DNA of 64,000 nucleotides from Octopus bimaculoides (lineage: Eukaryota). Numbering within the stretch: position 1 is the first letter of the stretch; each line of letters starts with the position of its first letter. The notes beneath the pieces were generated by a model, which saw only the letters and a program-made list of their open reading frames with translations, did no database searches and was not told where the DNA came from. A program made the translations under genes and the position numbers. Positions 11,883 through 20,026 of this stretch are shown piece after piece. The stretch is from positions 17,362,183 through 17,426,182 of the forward strand of contig NC_068994.1 in assembly GCF_001194135.2 (NCBI RefSeq), given 5' to 3'.

Positions 11883-14120
11883 TATATAGGCACACACACA
11901 AAACAGTGCATCAACATGGACGTCTCAAGCTTAAATAAGTATAAGAAAACATATATCCATATGTATAAATAATGGAGAAGACCTGTGGAGAAAGATAAAA
12001 TAAATACAACTTGAGAACTGATGTTCAGTCTCAGTAACACACACACACACGAGGCCCTCCCCTCATAAAAACTTACTAAAAACTGCCCAGAGGGTGGTGT
12101 TTCTACTTGTTTATACATACTATAAAAAATATTACATTTCATTCAATATCTGAGTTAACAAAAAAAAAAATTCAAACCATAAGTGTTAAATCAGTCATTT
12201 ATTGAAATTTTTCTGAAAATTACTTGGATTTGATTTAATTAGTTGTGTGGTTTGTTACAAGATCATTTTTTTAATTTTTAAATTAAAAGTCCTTTGGTGT
12301 TCATAACTTACACTTGTAAGAGAAAAGAGCAATTTGTAGCAAGTCTAGATGAGGTCTGACTCATGAAAAATCATAAGATAATTATGTGTATGTGTGTGTG
12401 TGTGTGTACAGGCAGGACTGTATAATTAAGAAGTTTGCTTCCCAACCACATGGCTTCGAGTTCAGACTTACTCTATGGCATGTTGAACAAGTTCTACTAT
12501 AATACTACACCAAACAGACTTATGAATGGATCTGGTAGACAGAAACTGAAAGAAACCTGTCATTTATAAATATATTTATGTATGTCTCTGTATATATATA
12601 TAATGTGTGTTATTTCTTTACTACCCACAAGGGGCTACACACAGAGGGGAGAAACAAGGACAGACAAACGGATTAAGTCGATTATATCGACCCCAGTGCG
12701 TAACTGGTACTTATTTAATCGATCCCGAAAGGATGAAAGGCAAAGTCAACCTTGGCGGAATTTGAACTCAGAACGTGCTAACGTTTCTGCCAGCTCGCCA
12801 CCTTATATATATATCGTGTGTGGGTGTGTGAGATTGTGCATATGTTTATATATCCTTGTCTTGACATTACACGACAGTTGTAAACGATTGTCACTGTCAT
12901 ACAAGCAGTGTCATTCATTTCCATTATTTTGTGAAAAAAAATGTTTGACCATGGAGAGACATTATCTTGTTTGGAAATACATGAGGGTTGGTACTAGGAA
13001 AGGCATCCAGCCATAGAAAATCCACCTCAATAAATTCTGTACAATCCATGCAAGCATGAAAAAGTGACCTTTAAAATAACAATGATGATGATATATATCA
13101 TCTAAATTTTGCAAGACTAAACATTGGTAGCAATCTTTGAAGCTGAATAAGTCAACAATTCTTGCTTCATCGTAATTTATCTATTTCACTTCATTTAGAT
13201 TTTCGACACCACTGAAACAGGTATCATTGTCAACCTTAAATTTGTCCTTCCCCAAAGTCAACAGGGTTAATCTCTTATTCATAAATGTATCTCTGGTCAT
13301 ATATTTTCAAACAATCGGTTCTATCCTAGTTGCTTTCAATATTTATCTGATTGATATATAATGAGAAATTATTGATCGATTGATTGATTTCAGTCCAGGC
13401 CTATATGTGCAGGTATAATGCGGTTTTACTGGTGTGGATAAGAATCTTGAATGAAAAAGCTATACTGATGAAATATTAAAGGGAGGTCACTCAAAGTATC
13501 TTTTAAATTAAAATTTTGTAACTTTGTCGTAATTAAAAAAAATTCTTTTAGTTTTGTAAAGATTTCAAGCACATTCTGTCTTAATGCATTTTAAATTTTG
13601 TTCATTATTTTGTTACACTAGGAGTGGTCTGCATCTGTAAATATCGCAATCTCTTGAGAATTTCTCGACCAGTACAACTTAATACATTTGCAACAATTAA
13701 AACTTGACATTAATTGTACAGTAAAAAGAAAGGAGATATTAGATGAGGTAGTCCTCCACCCAGCTCAAAAGACAGGAAAGCTATGGTTGGAATGTTTTTG
13801 GTCATATGTCTGAGTGATCAGACTTGACCTTGGCTAAACAACAGTTTCTAATACAATTACAACTAGATCGATAATAATTCACGGTTAATTTTCATTTATT
13901 GCTATTAGCATTGTAGTGTCATAGATGGTTAGATTTGCTTATGCGATATTTCTAATAAAAGCGTTTAATTATCTTGAAGCTTTCCGGTAACTGCATTCAG
14001 TGGATAAAAATCTTTTATTAAAATTTTTTCCCCTAGAAGGAATGTGAAGGTGAACGAAAATAGTTTCATCGTTAATATTAAACATGGTATTTTCAGTCGC
14101 TTGTTTACTGATAATACATT

Positions 14121-14167
<47 letters not shown>

Positions 14168-16928
14168 AACAGACAGAGACAATGCATTTTTTTTTTTTAC
14201 TCTAGGCACAAGGCCTGAAATTTTGGGGGAGGGGTCCAGTCGATTAGATCGACTCCAGTACGCAACTGGTACTTAATTTATCGACCCCGAAAGGATGAAA
14301 AGCAAAGTCGACCTCGGCAGAATTTGAACTCAGAGCATAAAGACAGACGAAATACCGCTAAGCATTTCGCCCGACGTGCTAACATTTCTGCCAGCTCGCC
14401 GCCATAGAGAGGATGCCTATTGGCTTTTGTACATCGGCGTGTGTGTACACACACACACTGTGCCTTTTTGTCTCCGCTTGATTCTCAGTCAACAATTTAT
14501 CACGAATCACTTTGGAGTATTTTTCAACTGGGGTTCATATAAGATTTTGTTGTTAAAATTTATGTGGTTATACTCTTACAATATACTCTTACAATATACA
14601 AAATATTCTAACAATTTTTTATGCAGTTCCTAATAGTATTTAATTATGAAAATATAACAGAATTTTTTGTATGTTCATCGAATGGCTATGAGGGTCTACC
14701 CAAGTGGAATATGAATCAATGGGATCCACAGGCCAAAATTGGTTGAAAACCACTACTCAAAGTGGTCGCACTACCCATCAGAAATAGCAGCAAAATCTCA
14801 CTAAACCCAGACCTTTCAGCTTGAAAAAAAGGATAAATACTTTGGATAATGTAGTCATAGATACACCATGTCTGAAAATAAGACGTGATAGCCACGACTG
14901 GAACGTCTCTGATATTAATTAGCTAGGTTGAATTCGGTTTGATCCGAGTCCAAATAACAATCATTTTTCTCCCCCACTATTTTATCACTTGGTATCACAT
15001 TTTGACCGCATTATATTCAGGAACATCCTTAGTTTAATCCTAAATATTCTAAACTGGTTCTTATAAATGTTAGGGTTAGAATTCTCATTATTGTTTGTCA
15101 AATTCATATATTGTGGGTGTTTACTTTTACTAGATAAACCGGCTAGGCTGTATTTCATGTCAAGCAGTGTCATTTGAAAACCGAGTTTTATCAGATAAAA
15201 TGTTGAAGATGGTGACTCATCGGTGGTTTCAAGACAAAATAACTGCATATGACGCAAAATAACATCGATTGTATTGGGTGTTAGGAGCACTTGTTGATGT
15301 AGACGTATTATTATTAACCTTCCTTATTTTATCCTTGTGCGCACAAAACTAAATTTGACATACGAGAAGACATCGTAACTAATTTGACGAGTTAAATTTA
15401 TACGGGATCGACAAAAGCTTTCGATGGATTAAAAATCGAACTTTTAAAGTATATACGTACATTCATGACTAGATGGTCATTTAAATCAAAATTTGTCAAT
15501 GTACGATTTGATTTTAATTCTTAATTTCTTCTTAGCTTTATCCTGTTTCCATCGAACTTTCCTTAACCCTTTTGTTACCATATTTCTGTTGAGATGCTGT
15601 GTTTCTTTCAATTAATTTTAAATATAACAAAGAATTTAGTAAAATAACTTAGTTATTATTAAGCTCGTGTTAGGAACATAAATTGTGACTTAAGTTTAGT
15701 GGAAGATTTTAATTCAGAACTGCATCCATCATTCTAGACGTTCTCAGAATTCACCAGTTTATGTTTGTATGAAAACCGAAGCCTAATTAAGTTTGTAAGC
15801 TTTTCTTTTAAACCGCTTCTTTTTTCATAAAAAAATTTCCGATGTTTTCGTATTAGTTTCATTCATTGAACTACATTTACGTATATATATTACTTGGCCT
15901 TGTGTGTAGACATTTGTACATAAGCACAAGTTCATCTATTGTTAGTAAAGTTGTCAAATGTCATGAAACACCTTGCTTAGAATCAGGTTAATCATGATTG
16001 TGCTGGCTTATGATCAAACGTGTTCCAGTCGTAACAAACCAGGTTTTTTAAAACTACATTATCCAATGTGTCCATTGATGCTGTTTTCTAAAATAGTAGG
16101 TTGTGATGAGATTTGGTTGCTGTTTCTAGCAGGTCGAACCACAACCTGGAGGGTTTATCATAACAGTATCTTTTTAATTATTTTTCTTTCAATTCTGAGG
16201 CAGAGGAAGGGCAAAGCCCATGGTGATTTTTCAGGTCGGAAGGGAAAGTGAAGAGATCCTCAGACTGAAGACTTGGCTTGAAACTGAAAACTTGCAACGG
16301 AGTGGGCTCCGCTAACACTACCCAAATATTAGATGGTGGTGATATAAAATTGGATGACAAAATAAGATTACCACTCACCAAAAATAAAAAGCAATTATTC
16401 TCCACAATTTGAGAATGAAAAGCATTAAATGAAAAAATTAATAAAACAAGTATTTCAGGGTCTTGTCCCATAAGTAGGGGGAGGTAAATTTAGAAATGGA
16501 GAAAATTAAATTACTACTACTAAAGATGAAAAAGAACGTAATAGAAATGGGTTCGGTTATGCCAACAGGAAAACAGAACTTGAAACATGAGTATTTATAG
16601 TTTGTTTTTGTTTTTTATCAATAATCAGCAGAATTGTCAATGCACGAAGTTCTCGGTACTTCAGTCACTCTGTAACTTCTACCGATTATTAATAAAAAAA
16701 AAAAAAAAAACGTATTAACAGAAATGTATATTTATTCAGTTGAATACGTTCTTTATATATTAAGTTTAAATGATATCAGATATGTATGGTTACATAAAAT
16801 GATTTATCATTTTCGTGTCATTGATGCCAACATGAGTTCGGTCGAGCAAATGTTTGTTTCTCCAGCACATACTTTTAAAACAGTCTTTCAAAGTATTTTC
16901 AAATACATATATACTGGGAGGTTCATTG

Positions 16929-17022
16929 TTATGGCCGGTCAGAGTGACCATTAGGTTTCGCACCTATAAAGCGCTTAGCCGTATAGGTAACTCGTCAGAC
17001 TCAAATAGTCATCGGCGCATAA
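16929..17022 (-). ncRNA. Type I hammerhead ribozyme with extended stem I
   Basis: Minus strand reads UUAUGCGCCG AUGACUA UUU GAGU CUGACGA GUUACCUAUA CGGCUAAGCGCUU UAUAGGUGC GAAA CC UAAU G GUC ACUC UGAC CGGCCAUAA. The catalytic core is complete, all three stems pair, and the GUC site predicts cleavage between 16946 and 16945. Confidence 0.88.
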
Positions 17023-17239
17023 GATTATTAATAATCAAGGGTAGTACAGGTAGCACCGGCACGCTAAAAATAGCAGTCAGAAGACAACTACAACCACAAA
17101 TTTCCACTGATACACATTAATTGAAGTCAGGGTAATGAGCAAAAATTCTAAGCCCCCGTACCAATAACGAAAAGATTACAATTCTTCAGTGTATCATATT
17201 CCCCAAAAAGAAACACACTCTAAAGCAGTAATGTATTTA

Positions 17240-17388
17240 TATGCAGTTAAGTCTGTATCCGGTCATAGAGTGACCAAAGGTTTCGCATCCCTAAAGGGCC
17301 TAGAGGCTAGCCCCGTCTATGGAGCCAGGCCATTTATGGATGCGAAATCATTGGTCACTCTATGACCGGAGACAGACTTAACTACATA
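17240..17388. repeat. 149-bp fold-back built from two copies of a hammerhead 3' half
   Basis: 51-bp arms with 4 mismatches plus about 11 further paired bases. Each arm reads outward ...GATGC GAAA (CCTTT/TCATT) GGTC ACTCTATGACCGG, homologous to the 16929-17022 motif. Confidence 0.85.
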
Positions 17389-17519
17389 GGTGTAGGAGTG
17401 GCTATGTGGTAAGTAGCTTGCTTACCAACCACATGCTTCCGGGTTCAATCCCACTGCGTGGCACCTTGGGCAAGTGTCTTCCGCTATAGCTTTTCTTTTA
17501 AACCGCTTCTTTTTTCATT

Positions 17520-18410
17520 GGATCAATGAAAGTCTGAAAATAATTGGCCCTATTGCGAATTAATTTCCGGAAGCATAGACACGTCACTTTCCTAATTATG
17601 CTACATGTAATATAAATAATCTTTTCTAGCGTTATACGCTTTCTTAAAAAAAAAAAGGCAATAAAGGTATCCACAGATCTGTCCTCAGAGAAACACGAAA
17701 GATCTACCGTGATAATATGACTATCTTCTGGTTTTGAGAACACCCATGCCTTTTATAACAGTACTGATTTCAATATTTCGAAAGCTAATTGAAATATATA
17801 ACTAAGGGTAACACGACACTCGTTTCCTTTACCCTTCTCATACAGTATTTTGACAATTTGGTTTAACACCCGCGGATGAGGAAGCGGAATTAAAGAAAAC
17901 ATAACTCATGCCAAGAAAAATCAAATGTCATGGGCAATGTTGAAGCTAAAAGGTGCTATTTCATTATATATACATATATTTAAGGAGGCGGGAGAATAGA
18001 CAGAGAAGTAGTGGAGGGCATCCAAATGTAACATATGTTATTGATACCGTGTTACAGGAAGTTCCGGGTCGAGAAAGGTGAAACTGAATTTTGATAAGGG
18101 ATTAGCTGACGGATGTCAGTATTGCGCAGACGTGTATTATGTGTTCTTAGCAGCAAAAGCATAACAGAAGAGAAATGGAAAGCTTAAATGAGAGAGAGAG
18201 AGAGAAATACAATGACAAAGTAGGAGGGGGAAGTTGAGAGTGAGGGAGAGAGATACAAAGATAGACGGGGCAGTCAAGAGTGAGGGAGAGAGATACAAAG
18301 ATAGACGGGGCAGTCAAGAGTGAGGGAGAGAGAGCGATACAAAAATAGAGGGGTGAAGGAGAGAGAGATACAAAGATAGAGGGGGGAATAGAGAGAGAGT
18401 TGAAGCCAGT
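17520..18410. promoter_or_regulatory. Probable divergent (bidirectional) promoter region
   Basis: CpG-retaining by eye. ETS-like TTCCGGAAGC (about 17565) and CAGGAAGT (about 18054), CRE-like CACGTCAC (about 17579), GC-box-like GAGGCGGGAG (about 17984). Minus-strand donor AGG|gtaaag at 17833/17832; plus-strand ATG exon at 18411. Confidence 0.5.
18238..18332 (+). repeat. 40-bp purine-rich minisatellite (2.4 perfect copies plus degenerate copies to about 18400)
   Basis: Unit GAGTGAGGGAGAGAGATACAAAGATAGACGGGGCAGTCAA at 18238 and 18278, partial copy at 18318. Confidence 0.95.
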
Positions 18411-18592
18411 ATGGCGACTGCCGATCGTGGAGTACCTCCCCCCAAAACATTTCAATACAAACAATGGGAAAGAATGGGTGAGACGACTGTCAAAGATGCT
18501 GACTTGGTTCGAGAAGAAGCCATCAAAGCCCATCACGATCACCTTATTACGGAAATCGAATCTGCCGACGGTCCACTGGCCACCACTCTCAG
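18411..18592 (+). CDS. First coding exon of an unidentified gene (MATADRGVPPPKTFQYKQWERMGETTVKDADLVREEAIKAHHDHLITEIESADGPLATTL)
   Basis: Good Kozak context gccagtATGG, coding-like composition against an AT-rich background, phase-2 donor AG|gtaaac. Confidence 0.8.
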
Positions 18593-19729
18593 GTAAACTT
18601 CTTAACGTCATAGCATTTGAAACCCAAGTCAAACTTTACTTCCCACTCGAAAACAATTCCTTTTTGTCCTTTTCTGACAAATCACTCCTCGAGTAATAAT
18701 AATTCCAGACAACTATTCAATTCCGTTTATTTCTCATGGATAATTTCCTATTGAAATGCCAACTTCTTTTAAACTTTTACATCTTAATTGTCGCTTTTAC
18801 ATTAATTAATGCCTTATGTAAAACATAACAAGTAGCACCTTCATTTAAGAAGGGAGACACCCCTCTTGTTTCTCATTTGTCAATCCATCCTTGTCTTTGC
18901 TGTTATTTCGGCTGTAAACAACTTACATGGTAACTTTTGGTGAAAGGGTCATCCTTCTTATCAACTTCGAAATTGTGTGGTGACATTCAATTTAGTTAGC
19001 CTTCTCTGTTGTACATACACACGCACACACGTACACAGCTATACATATATAATATAAAATTCCCTAGTTACGAAGCCTTCTCCCTTCCAAATTAATAATG
19101 TCTGTTATTTAGATGTAGTTGCATATATCGATTTCAAGAAAAGTAGTGTTTGGGTGGTTTAGGGTTCAGAAAATTGAGGAATAATTCTCAATAGTATTTA
19201 TGTATATTGCCTATATACGACAGCATGGTCAGGCTTCTGCAGTTTCGTTTCTCAATAAAAGTTTTGTTTTCCTACAAAATATAGACCTTTTCTGTGTTAT
19301 TTCCTGTGTTACAGACCTTCGCGCTAGGGTCTGCTGGTTTTCATAAATTAGTTTACAAACATCTTCGCCAACAAGCTGTCTTCTATAATTAAATCTGCTT
19401 GCTCCATAGAAAATCTGACTTAACTAGGTATCGTATTTTTTTTCCTTTCCTATTTGACAAGCATAGATTTTTTTTTTTTTTACACTTAACAGAATTTCTA
19501 AAGCATTGCATTTTGATCTAATCTGGCAAAACCCTTTTTCAGACGAGCCCTTGTCGTTTTTGCCGATAGACCTGTCTGACACTTCCTCTGCACCTTACAT
19601 ATATACGTATGTGTATATTTACACACACACACACTTGTATAAATATATATATGTGCTCCAGTATGGCCACAGTCAAATGACTGAAATAAAAGATATATAC
19701 ATGTGTGTATGTATTTATATATGTGTGTA

Positions 19730-19770
<41 letters not shown>

Positions 19771-19867
19771 ATGTATATGTTTATGTGTGTGTGTATATAT
19801 GTATATGTGTGTGCATGCATATGTATATATGTGTGTATATATATATGTGTGTGTGTATATATATATG

Positions 19868-19918
<51 letters not shown>

Positions 19919-19964
19919 ATGTATGTGTGTATATATGTGTATATATACGTATATATATGTGTGT

Positions 19965-20026
<62 letters not shown>

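What the first reader, a model, noticed from the sequence alone, without database searches (positions are those of the whole stretch)
16929..17022. Intact extended type I hammerhead ribozyme next to a divergent promoter
Seen (minus strand): core CUGACGA (16998-16992) and GAAA (16959-16956), a G-C pair closing a 9-bp stem II with one bulge, stem III A-U/C-G/C-G with a UAAU loop, and a GUC triplet (16948-16946). Stem I has 4 proximal bp, then U-U, G-U and A-U, an asymmetric AUGACUA loop and a 9-bp distal helix. Established: this is the conserved hammerhead core, and a stem I internal loop docking on loop II is what gives natural type I ribozymes fast cleavage. Inference: it lies about 0.8 kb downstream of a minus-strand donor (17833), so it may be a sense-oriented, first-intron self-cleaving RNA acting on the nascent transcript, or a domesticated retrozyme/Penelope relic. 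Mammalian CCDC186 (C10orf118) carries the conserved intronic hammerhead HH10. Here the motif is 14 kb downstream of CCDC186 and antisense to it, so that link is probably coincidence but easy to test.
Basis: partly seen in the sequence, partly recalled or inferred. Interest (0 to 1): 0.9.

Follow-up and report, generated by a model that had tools for sequence, protein, structure and literature searches.

The report
Hammerhead ribozyme in a retroelement relic
The sequence is a genuine, complete hammerhead self-cleaving RNA motif, but it is one untranscribed copy of a mobile repeat family found about a hundred to ten thousand times in this animal and its relatives, so it is an ordinary retroelement remnant and not a host gene-control device.

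Summary
The motif is real. It is the only hit to a type I descriptor in the window (0.035 expected by chance).

It is not a single-copy host element. DNA reads show the 50-nt core at about 100 copies in this species and in two relatives. A more distant species that lacks the orthologous flank has about 10,000 copies. The catalytic core is the least variable part.

The locus has the insertion architecture of Penelope-like elements and non-LTR retrozymes:
- an inverted 5'-truncated copy (17333-17388, + strand);
- a direct 5'-truncated copy (17303-17243);
- a full unit of about 174 nt carrying the intact ribozyme, split by an unrelated 149-bp repeat.

The two truncated copies together form a 150-nt hairpin.

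No RNA read at 97% identity or more covers this copy. The splice donor proposed at 17833 has no support. The probable orthologue in a sister species has diverged at least as much as its flank. No Rfam hammerhead model scores it, HH10 included, so the CCDC186 link is coincidence.

Verdict: a new member of a known kind. Catalytic competence is plausible but untested, and interest is low to moderate.

The parts
16929..17022 (-). Intact type I hammerhead (copy H-). Core CUGACGA 16998-16992; helix II 16991-16960; GAAA 16959-16956; helix III 16956-16947; C17 at 16946; predicted cut between 16946 and 16945; helix I 17022-16999 paired with 16945-16929.
   Evidence: Sequence read; descriptor hit; pair list and energies; the family consensus aligns over 17006-16925 at 88%.
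16920..17026 (-). 3' part of repeat unit 2: the hammerhead plus a tail of about 25 nt. Family similarity ends near 16920.
   Evidence: DNA depth falls to the unique level below about 16920. The alignment to the family consensus runs to CCATAACAAT.
17027..17175 (.). Unrelated 149-bp interspersed repeat inserted into unit 2. It has no terminal inverted repeats.
   Evidence: Many contigs in three species match exactly 17027-17175 at 80-99% with their own different flanks. The TIR check was negative. Removing it restores the match to the family 5' flank.
17176..17242 (-). 5' part of repeat unit 2. In other family copies this sequence follows the 3' end of a preceding hammerhead.
   Evidence: Elevated DNA depth. 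Contig joints link the hammerhead 3' end (16925-16932) to 17223-17235 through 15-39 nt in organisms B and F.
17243..17303 (-). 5'-truncated unit 1 (copy P-). It begins in loop 2 and carries the helix II 3' strand, GAAA, helix III, a C17 equivalent at 17272 and the helix I 3' strand. It has no catalytic CUGANGA half.
   Evidence: Alignment to H-. In other copies the missing half is GAGUCUGACGAGUCGUCCAUAGGG (loose ends at 17303). blastn to the consensus.
17304..17332 (.). 29-nt junction filler between the two head-to-head truncated copies. It forms the apical part of the 150-nt hairpin.
   Evidence: Low copy depth compared with both arms; fold.
17333..17388 (+). Inverted 5'-truncated copy (P+). 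It is a hammerhead 3' half in sense on the + strand, with a C17 equivalent at 17356.
   Evidence: 113-115 DNA reads from other copies precede 17333 with GTCTGACGAGTCGTCCATAAGGCTAAGCGC, which completes a hammerhead. The same is seen in organisms B and C. blastn to the consensus at 92%.
17389..17487 (+). Context: a fragment of a hyper-abundant tRNA-like SINE abutting the inverted copy. It is not part of the hammerhead family.
   Evidence: DNA depth of about 40,000 per bin against 1-3 for unique sequence. The family consensus continues differently after 17481-17490.
18313..18592 (+). Context: first exon of a + strand gene (ATG at 18412, GT donor at 18593). Its promoter is the 'promoter' of the finding's title.
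   Evidence: These are the first 280 nt of a 1629-nt RNA contig that ends its match at 18592. Sequence.

Best explanation
The motif is one copy of a short, non-coding, hammerhead-bearing retroelement family. The unit is about 174-177 nt with 39% G+C. [quoted passage not shown]

How active family members would work is inferred from the literature, not shown here. Head-to-tail copies are transcribed. Each type I hammerhead cuts after its GUC. The resulting monomers, with 5'-OH and 2',3'-cyclic phosphate ends, can be ligated into small circles. A Penelope-type reverse transcriptase/GIY-YIG endonuclease then copies them into new sites, leaving 5'-truncated copies, partial tandems and inverted copies.

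At this locus that process left four pieces, read along the minus strand:
- an inverted truncated copy;
- a direct truncated copy;
- one full unit whose hammerhead still has every catalytic nucleotide;
- a later insertion of an unrelated 149-bp repeat into that unit.

Only this one hammerhead could cut, between 16946 and 16945, and only if the minus strand were transcribed. No such transcription is detected. The copy is best read as a neutrally evolving relic with latent catalytic potential and no host function.
For: 1. Complete core and three helices.
2. Family membership. With DNA reads at 80% identity or more, 16956-17006 is 130-170 reads deep against 1-3 for unique flanks, which is about 100 copies. 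Organisms B and C show similar ratios and the same flanking consensus. Organism F shows depth of about 1.3-2.6e5 against about 20, which is about 10,000 copies, with no orthologous flank.
3. The core is the conserved part. In organism F only 16977, 16980, 16988 and 16989 vary at 15% or more, and all four lie in helix II or loop 2. In organism A the commonest core variant is at the free position N7 (C>U, 17%), and the G12 variant sits in a CpG.
4. Variant frequencies fit compensation in helix II: 16987/16963 at 12-15% each, and 16985/16965 in RNA-derived copies. The consensus also has one extra base on both strands of helix II.
5. Architecture. Both arms of the 17241-17388 hairpin are hammerhead 3' halves whose missing 5' halves are present in other copies. 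This matches the published description of PLE insertions: 5' truncation, partial tandem, and an inverted 5'-truncated copy at the 5' end (PMC8557442).
6. Hammerhead style. [quoted passage not shown] Pairs on opposite strands 100-700 bp apart are also reported there (PMC4209133).
7. Unit size and low G+C fit non-LTR retrozymes (PMC7229834).
8. No locus-specific RNA.
9. The orthologue is more diverged than its flank.
Against: - Self-cleavage was not, and could not be, tested here.
- No Rfam hammerhead model scores the motif.
- The catalytic fold is about 5 kcal/mol less stable than a competing fold.
- Loop-loop tertiary contacts cannot be recognised. The 9-bp helix II places loop 2 far from the helix I loop.
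- A true multi-unit tandem is not present here. There are about 1.3 units, and the evidence that the 149-bp repeat is an insertion into a unit rests on a short match across the junction.
- No reverse transcriptase or GIY-YIG ORF lies in the window, so the link to Penelope-like elements is by architecture and literature only.
- No circular-RNA-type joints were seen in RNA reads.
- Family consensus sequences come from read loose ends with 0.55-0.8 agreement, and linkage between variants is unknown.
Confidence: 0.8

Rival explanations
1. Host-exapted ribozyme. The copy is kept because it cleaves a minus-strand host transcript. That transcript would be either the first intron of a minus-strand gene or the upstream-antisense transcript of the + strand gene's promoter at about 18.3 kb, so the cut would terminate or destabilise it.
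For: The hammerhead core is intact although the insertion is old enough to be shared with organism C. A real promoter lies 1.3 kb away. Two low-depth RNA contigs lie at 17843-18194.
Against: Depth is about 0 over 16870-17280 at 97% identity or more in two raw RNA runs and two contig sets, and no joint leaves 17833. The orthologue shows 14 of 155 differences against 3 of 112 in the flank, including changes in helices I and II. The copy has drifted from the family consensus in helix I, losing the middle UCAG/CUGA segment. It is one of about 100 similar copies.
Confidence: 0.04
2. A hammerhead in form only. This copy, and perhaps the whole family, is catalytically dead or needs a partner copy. 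The reasons would be that the competing fold sequesters both strands of proximal helix I and that no loop-loop docking exists.
For: The hammerhead fold scores -21.8 against an MFE of -27.1 kcal/mol. Rfam models are silent. Metazoan PLE hammerheads were reported to cleave poorly in vitro (PMC4209133).
Against: All catalytic nucleotides are present and conserved across about 10,000 copies in organism F, which argues that the family was selected for cleavage when it spread. Helix III has 3 bp, so it is not the 1-bp form that requires dimers. Nearest-neighbour energies ignore tertiary contacts and co-transcriptional folding.
Confidence: 0.25
3. A LINE-mobilised SINE-like element carrying a hammerhead, as with Schistosoma Sm-alpha, and not a Penelope-type or retrozyme element.
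For: The unit is short and non-coding, and many copies appear solitary or embedded in differing flanks. No PLE ORF lies nearby.
Against: The unit shows no poly(A) or A-rich tail at its 3' end. The head-to-head inverted truncated copy and the partial tandem are typical of PLE-type integration and not of LINE target-primed integration.
Confidence: 0.08
4. A chance resemblance to the hammerhead consensus inside a long AT-rich hairpin-forming repeat.
For: A loose descriptor would hit by chance about once per 1.8 Mb, which is on the order of 1,000 times in a genome of a few Gb. No Rfam model supports it.
Against: The same core with the same helices recurs in hundreds to thousands of copies in four species labels, and variation is concentrated outside the catalytic nucleotides.
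Confidence: 0.02

Closest known systems
Metazoan non-LTR retrozymes: short tandem repeats with type I hammerheads, expressed as small circular RNAs (Cervera and de la Pena 2020, PMC7229834)
   Same: Type I hammerhead with a helix III of more than 1 bp, as in invertebrate examples. The unit is non-coding, about 174-177 nt (their range is 150-450 bp), with 39% G+C (theirs is under 45%). The family is multi-copy and lineage-specific, and the ribozyme is its most conserved part. Head-to-tail continuity is seen here and in contigs of other copies.
   Different: Only about 1.3 units lie at this locus. No circular or abundant RNA was detected. Helix II is much longer (9-10 bp plus an 11-13 nt loop) than the canonical 4 bp. 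The conserved loop 1-loop 2 nucleotides are not recognisable.
Hammerheads in the pseudo-LTRs of Penelope-like elements (Cervera and de la Pena 2014, PMC4209133; Craig et al. 2021, PMC8557442)
   Same: Large helix II with a bulged base near its 5' end. Short proximal helix I with an ill-defined loop 1. G10.1-C11.1 is kept. Copies occur on opposite strands a few hundred bp apart. The insertion shows 5' truncation, a partial tandem and an adjacent inverted truncated copy.
   Different: No RT/GIY-YIG ORF is within 64 kb. Helix III is a 3-bp hairpin with a non-palindromic loop, not the minimal 0-2 bp form thought to act as a dimer. The unpaired base lies after the second pair of helix II, not between A9 and G10.1.
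Amniote intronic hammerheads HH9 and HH10 (Rfam RF02275, RF02277; HH10 lies in an intron of C10orf118/CCDC186)
   Different: HH9 and HH10 are single-copy, ultraconserved and sense-intronic. This motif belongs to a repeat family of 100 to 10,000 copies, lies outside that gene on the other strand, matches neither Rfam model, and its orthologue is not conserved above background.
Schistosoma Sm-alpha, newt satellite 2 and cave-cricket pDo500 hammerhead repeats
   Same: Type I hammerheads carried by short, dispersed or tandem non-coding repeats in animal genomes.
   Different: Those match Rfam Hammerhead_1 and have a 4-bp helix II with defined tertiary contacts. Several have a 1-bp helix III and act as dimers.

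Membership tests
Hammerhead ribozyme, type I | Invariant core: C3 U4 G5 A6 N7 G8 A9, G12 A13 A14, the A15.1-U16.1 pair, and H17 (not G) at the cleavage site | tested here: met
   CUGACGA 16998-16992; GAA 16959-16957; A16956-U16947; C16946.
Hammerhead ribozyme, type I | Three helices around the core, with helices II and III closed by loops and helix I open | tested here: met
   Helix I 4+2+9 bp, helix II 9 bp, helix III 3 bp. All pairs are standard or G-U.
Hammerhead ribozyme, type I | Match to a curated covariance model (Rfam Hammerhead_1, Hammerhead_3, Hammerhead_II, HH9 or HH10) | tested here: not met
   No hammerhead hit at gathering score, nor at E<=10 on 601, 102 or 65 bases. The long helix II and the interrupted helix I probably account for this, but that is inference.
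Hammerhead ribozyme, type I | Core conserved, and helices maintained, among homologous copies | tested here: met
   In about 10,000 copies in organism F no core position varies at 15% or more. In organism A the main core variant is at N7. Helix II variant frequencies fit compensation, but linkage is unverified.
Hammerhead ribozyme, type I | Loop 1-loop 2 tertiary interaction | not testable with these tools
   No recognisable conserved loop nucleotides; this needs structure probing or kinetics.
Hammerhead ribozyme, type I | Mg2+-dependent site-specific self-cleavage | not testable with these tools
   Experimental. The thermodynamic prediction shows a competing fold 5 kcal/mol more stable.
Metazoan non-LTR retrozyme | Head-to-tail tandem repeats of 150-450 bp, each with a type I hammerhead | tested here: inconclusive
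   One truncated unit plus one full unit lie in direct order. C17-to-C17 spacing is 326 nt, or about 177 nt without the 149-bp insert. Contig joints in other copies link a hammerhead 3' end to the unit's 5' part. No long array was seen.
Metazoan non-LTR retrozyme | Non-coding, low G+C (under 45%) | tested here: met
   The unit is 174 nt with G+C 0.39. No ORF with a Pfam domain.
Metazoan non-LTR retrozyme | Expressed as linear and circular monomer RNA | tested here: inconclusive
   Some other family copies are transcribed. No 'goes back' joints appeared in RNA reads. This locus is silent. Poly(A)-type libraries are poorly suited to the question.
Penelope-like element (pseudo-LTR) | Hammerhead-bearing repeats flanking an RT plus GIY-YIG ORF | tested here: not met
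   No ORF above 314 aa. 20 ORFs scanned show no Pfam domain.
Penelope-like element (pseudo-LTR) | Insertion architecture: 5' truncation, partial tandem, and an inverted 5'-truncated copy at the 5' end | tested here: met
   P+ 17333-17388 is inverted, P- 17303-17243 is direct and truncated in loop 2, followed by unit 2. Definition from PMC8557442.
HH10/HH9 amniote intronic hammerheads | Single-copy, sense-intronic, conserved at the orthologous position; matches RF02277 or RF02275 | tested here: not met
   Multi-copy. No model match. No supported intron. The orthologue is not conserved above its flank.

The most novel reading that the evidence does not exclude
This old, still-intact copy has been co-opted. 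It lies in sense orientation 1.3 kb into the upstream-antisense transcription unit of the + strand gene's promoter. There it would cleave that transcript co-transcriptionally and enforce early termination of divergent transcription. The resulting RNA would be too unstable to appear in standard RNA-seq.
Probability: 0.04. Interest if true: 0.65.

Novelty: new member of a known kind. Interest (0 to 1): 0.27.

Why it matters
Type I hammerheads in animal repeats are well known, so the find does not change the picture. Three points are of practical interest.

1. This family is invisible to every Rfam hammerhead model although it has a perfect core. Rfam-based censuses of this clade, such as the 235 Hammerhead_1 loci reported for the giant squid (PMC6962438), therefore probably undercount ribozymes. 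A model built from this family would add hundreds to about ten thousand loci per genome.
2. The family differs about a hundredfold in copy number between related species. That makes it a usable case for studying bursts of retrozyme or Penelope-type amplification.
3. The locus is a clean example of the tandem-plus-inverted insertion signature. It also shows how two truncated ribozyme halves create a very stable 150-nt hairpin (-102 kcal/mol) that could be mistaken for a MITE or a hairpin RNA gene.

Tried and rejected
- **Rfam at four settings.** No hammerhead model matched. The only return was a 10-bit chance match to SNORD49, which I disregarded.
- **The 17241-17388 hairpin as a MITE, a foldback element or a mutated second ribozyme.** Rejected. 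Reads from other copies show that each arm is the 3' half of a complete hammerhead on its own strand.
- **The 149-bp segment 17027-17175 as a MITE.** It has no terminal inverted repeats, so it stays an unclassified interspersed repeat.
- **A nearby autonomous element.** No long ORF, and no Pfam domain in 20 ORFs.
- **Other CUGANGA...GAAA matches in the window.** There are 12 against 3.9 expected, but none besides this one passes the helix tests.
- **Splice structure of a minus-strand gene.** On 15500-19600 no joint from 17833 was found.
- **My first shuffle script timed out.** I replaced it with an order-1 Markov simulation.
- **Identity of the organism and of CCDC186.** Run labels are coded, and I ran no further search on a point that the family evidence already settles.
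- **Circular RNA evidence.** No back-joints appeared in RNA reads. The libraries are not suited to the question, so this is uninformative and not negative.

Full report
**1. The observation**

- Core: CUGACGA at 16998-16992 and GAAA at 16959-16956.
- Helix II: 9 bp, closed by G16991-C16960, with U16989 bulged and a 13-nt loop.
- Helix III: A-U, C-G, C-G, capped by UAAU.
- Cleavage site: GUC at 16948-16946.
- Helix I: four proximal pairs (GAGU/ACUC), then a U-U mismatch, U-G and U-A, a 7-nt 5' loop AUGACUA, and a 9-bp distal helix.

The only corrections are that the distal helix holds a bulged C17017 and that C16938 is unpaired (pairs listed).

A descriptor of my own asks for the core, helix I of at least 4 bp, helix II of at least 2 bp, helix III of at least 3 bp with A15.1-U16.1, and H17. 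It finds this site and no other on either strand of the window. In 400 window-equivalents of order-1 Markov sequence it finds 0.035 sites per window. A bare descriptor hit would therefore be expected roughly a thousand times in a genome of a few gigabases. It proves little alone, although the real helices are much longer than the minimum.

Two things count against a naive reading.
- No Rfam hammerhead model reports the site, at gathering score or at E<=10, even when only 102 or 65 bases are searched.
- The hammerhead fold (-21.8 kcal/mol when enforced) is less stable than the predicted minimum (-27.1). In that minimum both strands of proximal helix I are locked in small local hairpins.

**2. 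It is a member of a repeat family**

Public DNA reads of the same species (coded organism A) were laid on the region at 80-85% identity or more.
- 16956-17006 (proximal helix I 5' strand, core, helix II, GAAA) is 130-170 reads deep. Unique flanks are 1-3 deep.
- That is on the order of 100 copies.
- Nearly all these reads run on into unlike sequence, so they come from other loci.

Their loose ends give a family consensus on both sides.
- 5' side: CAGUUGUAGAGAGGUUAUGUGCCUUCAGCC, followed by AUUUGAGU-CUGAYGAG.
- 3' side: GAAACC-AAU-GGUC-ACUCUCUGACCGGCCAUAACAAU.

The extended helix I with its distal GUUAUG.GCC/GGCCAUAAC helix is therefore a family feature.

Variation falls where a hammerhead tolerates it.
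- The commonest core variant is C>U at the free position N7 (17%).
- The G12 variant (16%) and the C11.1 variant lie in a CpG.
- G5 and A9 variants are at 6-9%.
- Loop 2 and helix II positions 16980, 16988 and 16989 vary in 55-80% of reads.

Two helix II pairs show matching variant frequencies that would keep pairing. These are 16987/16963 (C-G to U-A, 12-15% each) and 16985/16965 (U-A to C-G, in the RNA-derived copies). The consensus also has one extra base on both strands of helix II relative to this copy. Linkage could not be checked.

**3. Other species**

Runs labelled organisms B and C carry the family at similar relative depth and with the same consensus.

Organism F shares no unique flank with the window at 80% identity or more, so it is more distant. 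It still has the hammerhead core at contig depths of 1.3-2.6e5 (run X44) and 3-6e4 (run X45). Single-copy contigs in those runs have depths of about 20 and about 5.5. That is roughly 10,000 copies.

In organism F only 16977, 16980, 16988 and 16989 vary at 15% or more. All four lie in helix II or loop 2, and no catalytic nucleotide does. A catalytic core held fixed while thousands of copies spread is what is expected of a ribozyme needed for the element's propagation. It disposes of the chance explanation.

**4. Anatomy of the locus**

326 nt upstream on the minus strand lies a 150-nt near-perfect hairpin, 17388-17241 (-101.8 kcal/mol, z = -16). Its 3' arm (GGAUGCGAAACCUUUGGUCACUCUAUGACCGG) is homologous to the 3' half of the hammerhead. 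Its 5' arm is simply the complement, with no CUGANGA.

Reads from other copies resolve this.
- On the + strand, 113-115 reads place GTCTGACGAGTCGTCCATAAGGCTAAGCGC in front of 17333. That completes a + strand hammerhead whose 3' half is 17333-17388.
- On the minus strand, other copies have GAGUCUGACGAGUCGUCCAUAGGG in front of 17303.

The hairpin is therefore two copies, each truncated at its 5' end inside loop 2, joined head to head through a 29-nt filler.

Downstream of the direct truncated copy, family sequence continues through 17242-17176. It is interrupted by 17175-17027 and resumes at 17026 with the intact hammerhead. The interrupting segment is a separate 149-bp repeat that occurs elsewhere with its own flanks and has no terminal inverted repeats.

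With the 149 bp removed, the junction reads TTGTA|AAATCTTATG against the family's TTGTAGAGAGGTTATG. The match is short but correctly placed. It gives a unit of about 174 nt with 39% G+C. Contigs from other copies in organisms B and F join a hammerhead 3' end to the unit's 5' part across 15-39 nt, so head-to-tail order is a family trait.

Only these three family pieces occur in the 64-kb window.

**5. What kind of element**

[quoted passage not shown] This locus shows exactly that.

The hammerheads found in Penelope pseudo-LTRs have a larger helix II, a bulged base near its start, and a short helix I with an ill-defined loop 1. They often sit as pairs on opposite strands 100-700 bp apart (PMC4209133). 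The present motif shares those traits, but its helix III is a proper 3-bp hairpin and not the minimal form.

Short tandem, low-G+C, non-coding units of 150-450 bp with type I hammerheads are the metazoan non-LTR retrozymes (PMC7229834). A 2026 preprint argues that these derive from Penelope pseudo-LTRs (10.64898/2026.07.22.740005).

No reverse transcriptase or GIY-YIG ORF is in the window. The longest clean ORFs have no Pfam domain, so this copy is non-autonomous or solitary. Whether the family is a retrozyme in the strict sense or a set of pseudo-LTR fragments cannot be settled without the whole genome.

**6. Host function?**

At 97% identity or more, two raw RNA runs (about 6% of each read) and two RNA contig sets give depth of about 0 over 16870-17280. 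At lower stringency RNA reads do lie on the motif. Every one of them is under 95% alike and carries the variants of a few other copies. Family members are therefore transcribed somewhere, but this copy is not detectably so.

No splice joint leaves the proposed donor at 17833. The only minus-side signal is two low-depth contigs at 17843-18052 and 18021-18194.

18313-18592 is the start of a 1629-nt RNA contig, with ATG at 18412 and a GT donor at 18593.

In organism C the unique flank 16800-16911 differs at 3 of 112 positions. The contig spanning 16893-17047 differs at 12 positions plus 2 gaps in 155. Fisher p is 0.04 counting the gaps and 0.11 without them. Several of these differences restore the family consensus, so this copy has itself drifted. 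Nothing suggests purifying selection.

The HH10/CCDC186 idea fails on copy number, strand, model match and conservation.

**7. Mechanism, and what is shown versus inferred**

Shown:
- the motif and its completeness;
- family membership;
- copy numbers;
- conservation of the core;
- the truncated, inverted and tandem architecture;
- lack of locus-specific RNA.

Inferred from the cited literature:
- active copies self-cleave after GUC;
- the monomers are circularised;
- a Penelope-type enzyme reverse-transcribes and integrates them.

Untested: whether this copy, or the consensus, cleaves at all. The competing fold and the absence of recognisable loop-loop contacts leave real doubt about rate.

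**8. Verdict**

It is an ordinary relic of a clade-wide hammerhead-bearing retroelement family and not a host regulatory device. It is a new member of a known kind. Its modest added interest is that Rfam models miss the family, and that its copy number ranges from about 100 to about 10,000 among related species.

Noticed in passing
window 17389-17487 (+): Fragment of a tRNA-like SINE present at enormous copy number. DNA depth is about 40,000 per bin against 1-3 for unique sequence, and it is also abundant in RNA. Here it is cut off at 17481-17490, where the family consensus continues CTCGGGCCGACCAAAGCCTTGTGAGTGGAT. A diverged copy lies at 12427-12492.
   Followed up: partly
window 15798-15828 and 17488-17518: A perfect 31-bp direct repeat (AGCTTTTCTTTTAAACCGCTTCTTTTTTCAT). 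It brackets the whole 1.66-kb block of repeats that contains the hammerhead copies and the SINE fragment. It could be a long target-site duplication or the trace of a duplication or template switch. Unexplained.
   Followed up: no
window 17027-17175: A discrete 149-bp interspersed repeat with sharp boundaries. It has tens of copies in organisms A, B and C at 80-99% identity, no terminal inverted repeats, and is essentially absent from organism F. Some contigs show opposite-strand joints inside it (17100-17175).
   Followed up: partly
window 18313-18592 (+): First exon of a + strand gene supported by a 1629-nt RNA contig. The ORF starts at 18412 (MATADRGVPPPKTFQYKQWERMGETTVKDADLVREEAIKAHHDHLITEIESADGPLATTL) and the donor GT is at 18593. 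No Pfam match for the 60 aa; the gene was not identified.
   Followed up: partly
window 18189-18399: GA-rich 40-bp and 31-bp tandem repeats. They run from upstream of the + strand gene's first exon into its first ~90 nt. Related copies are transcribed and give many loose ends.
   Followed up: no
window 15500-15773: Strong RNA signal at 97% identity or more (contig depth up to about 2,300), with 'goes back' joints and divergent loose ends at 15592. This is probably an expressed repeat and not an exon.
   Followed up: no
organism F runs X44 and X45, laid on window 16947-17009: The same hammerhead family is about a hundredfold more abundant (about 10,000 copies) in a more distant species that lacks the orthologous flank. 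The non-ribozyme part of the unit (17178-17240) is there only at tens of copies.
   Followed up: partly
RNA run X24, loose end behind window 17007: The main transcribed family copy elsewhere in the genome continues on the opposite strand into a second, degenerate hammerhead (ACCGAAGTCGCCTATACTGCTAAGCGCCTT, 26 reads, agreement 0.95). A head-to-head pair is therefore transcribed at another locus.
   Followed up: no
window 12676-12805 and 14238-14406: Two copies, about 90% alike, of another interspersed repeat (AGTCGATTA.ATCGAC...GGCGGAATTTGAACTCAGAACGTGCTAAC...). They look like a second SINE family.
   Followed up: no
window 19693-20017; whole window: A long (TA)n/(TG)n microsatellite.
   Followed up: no
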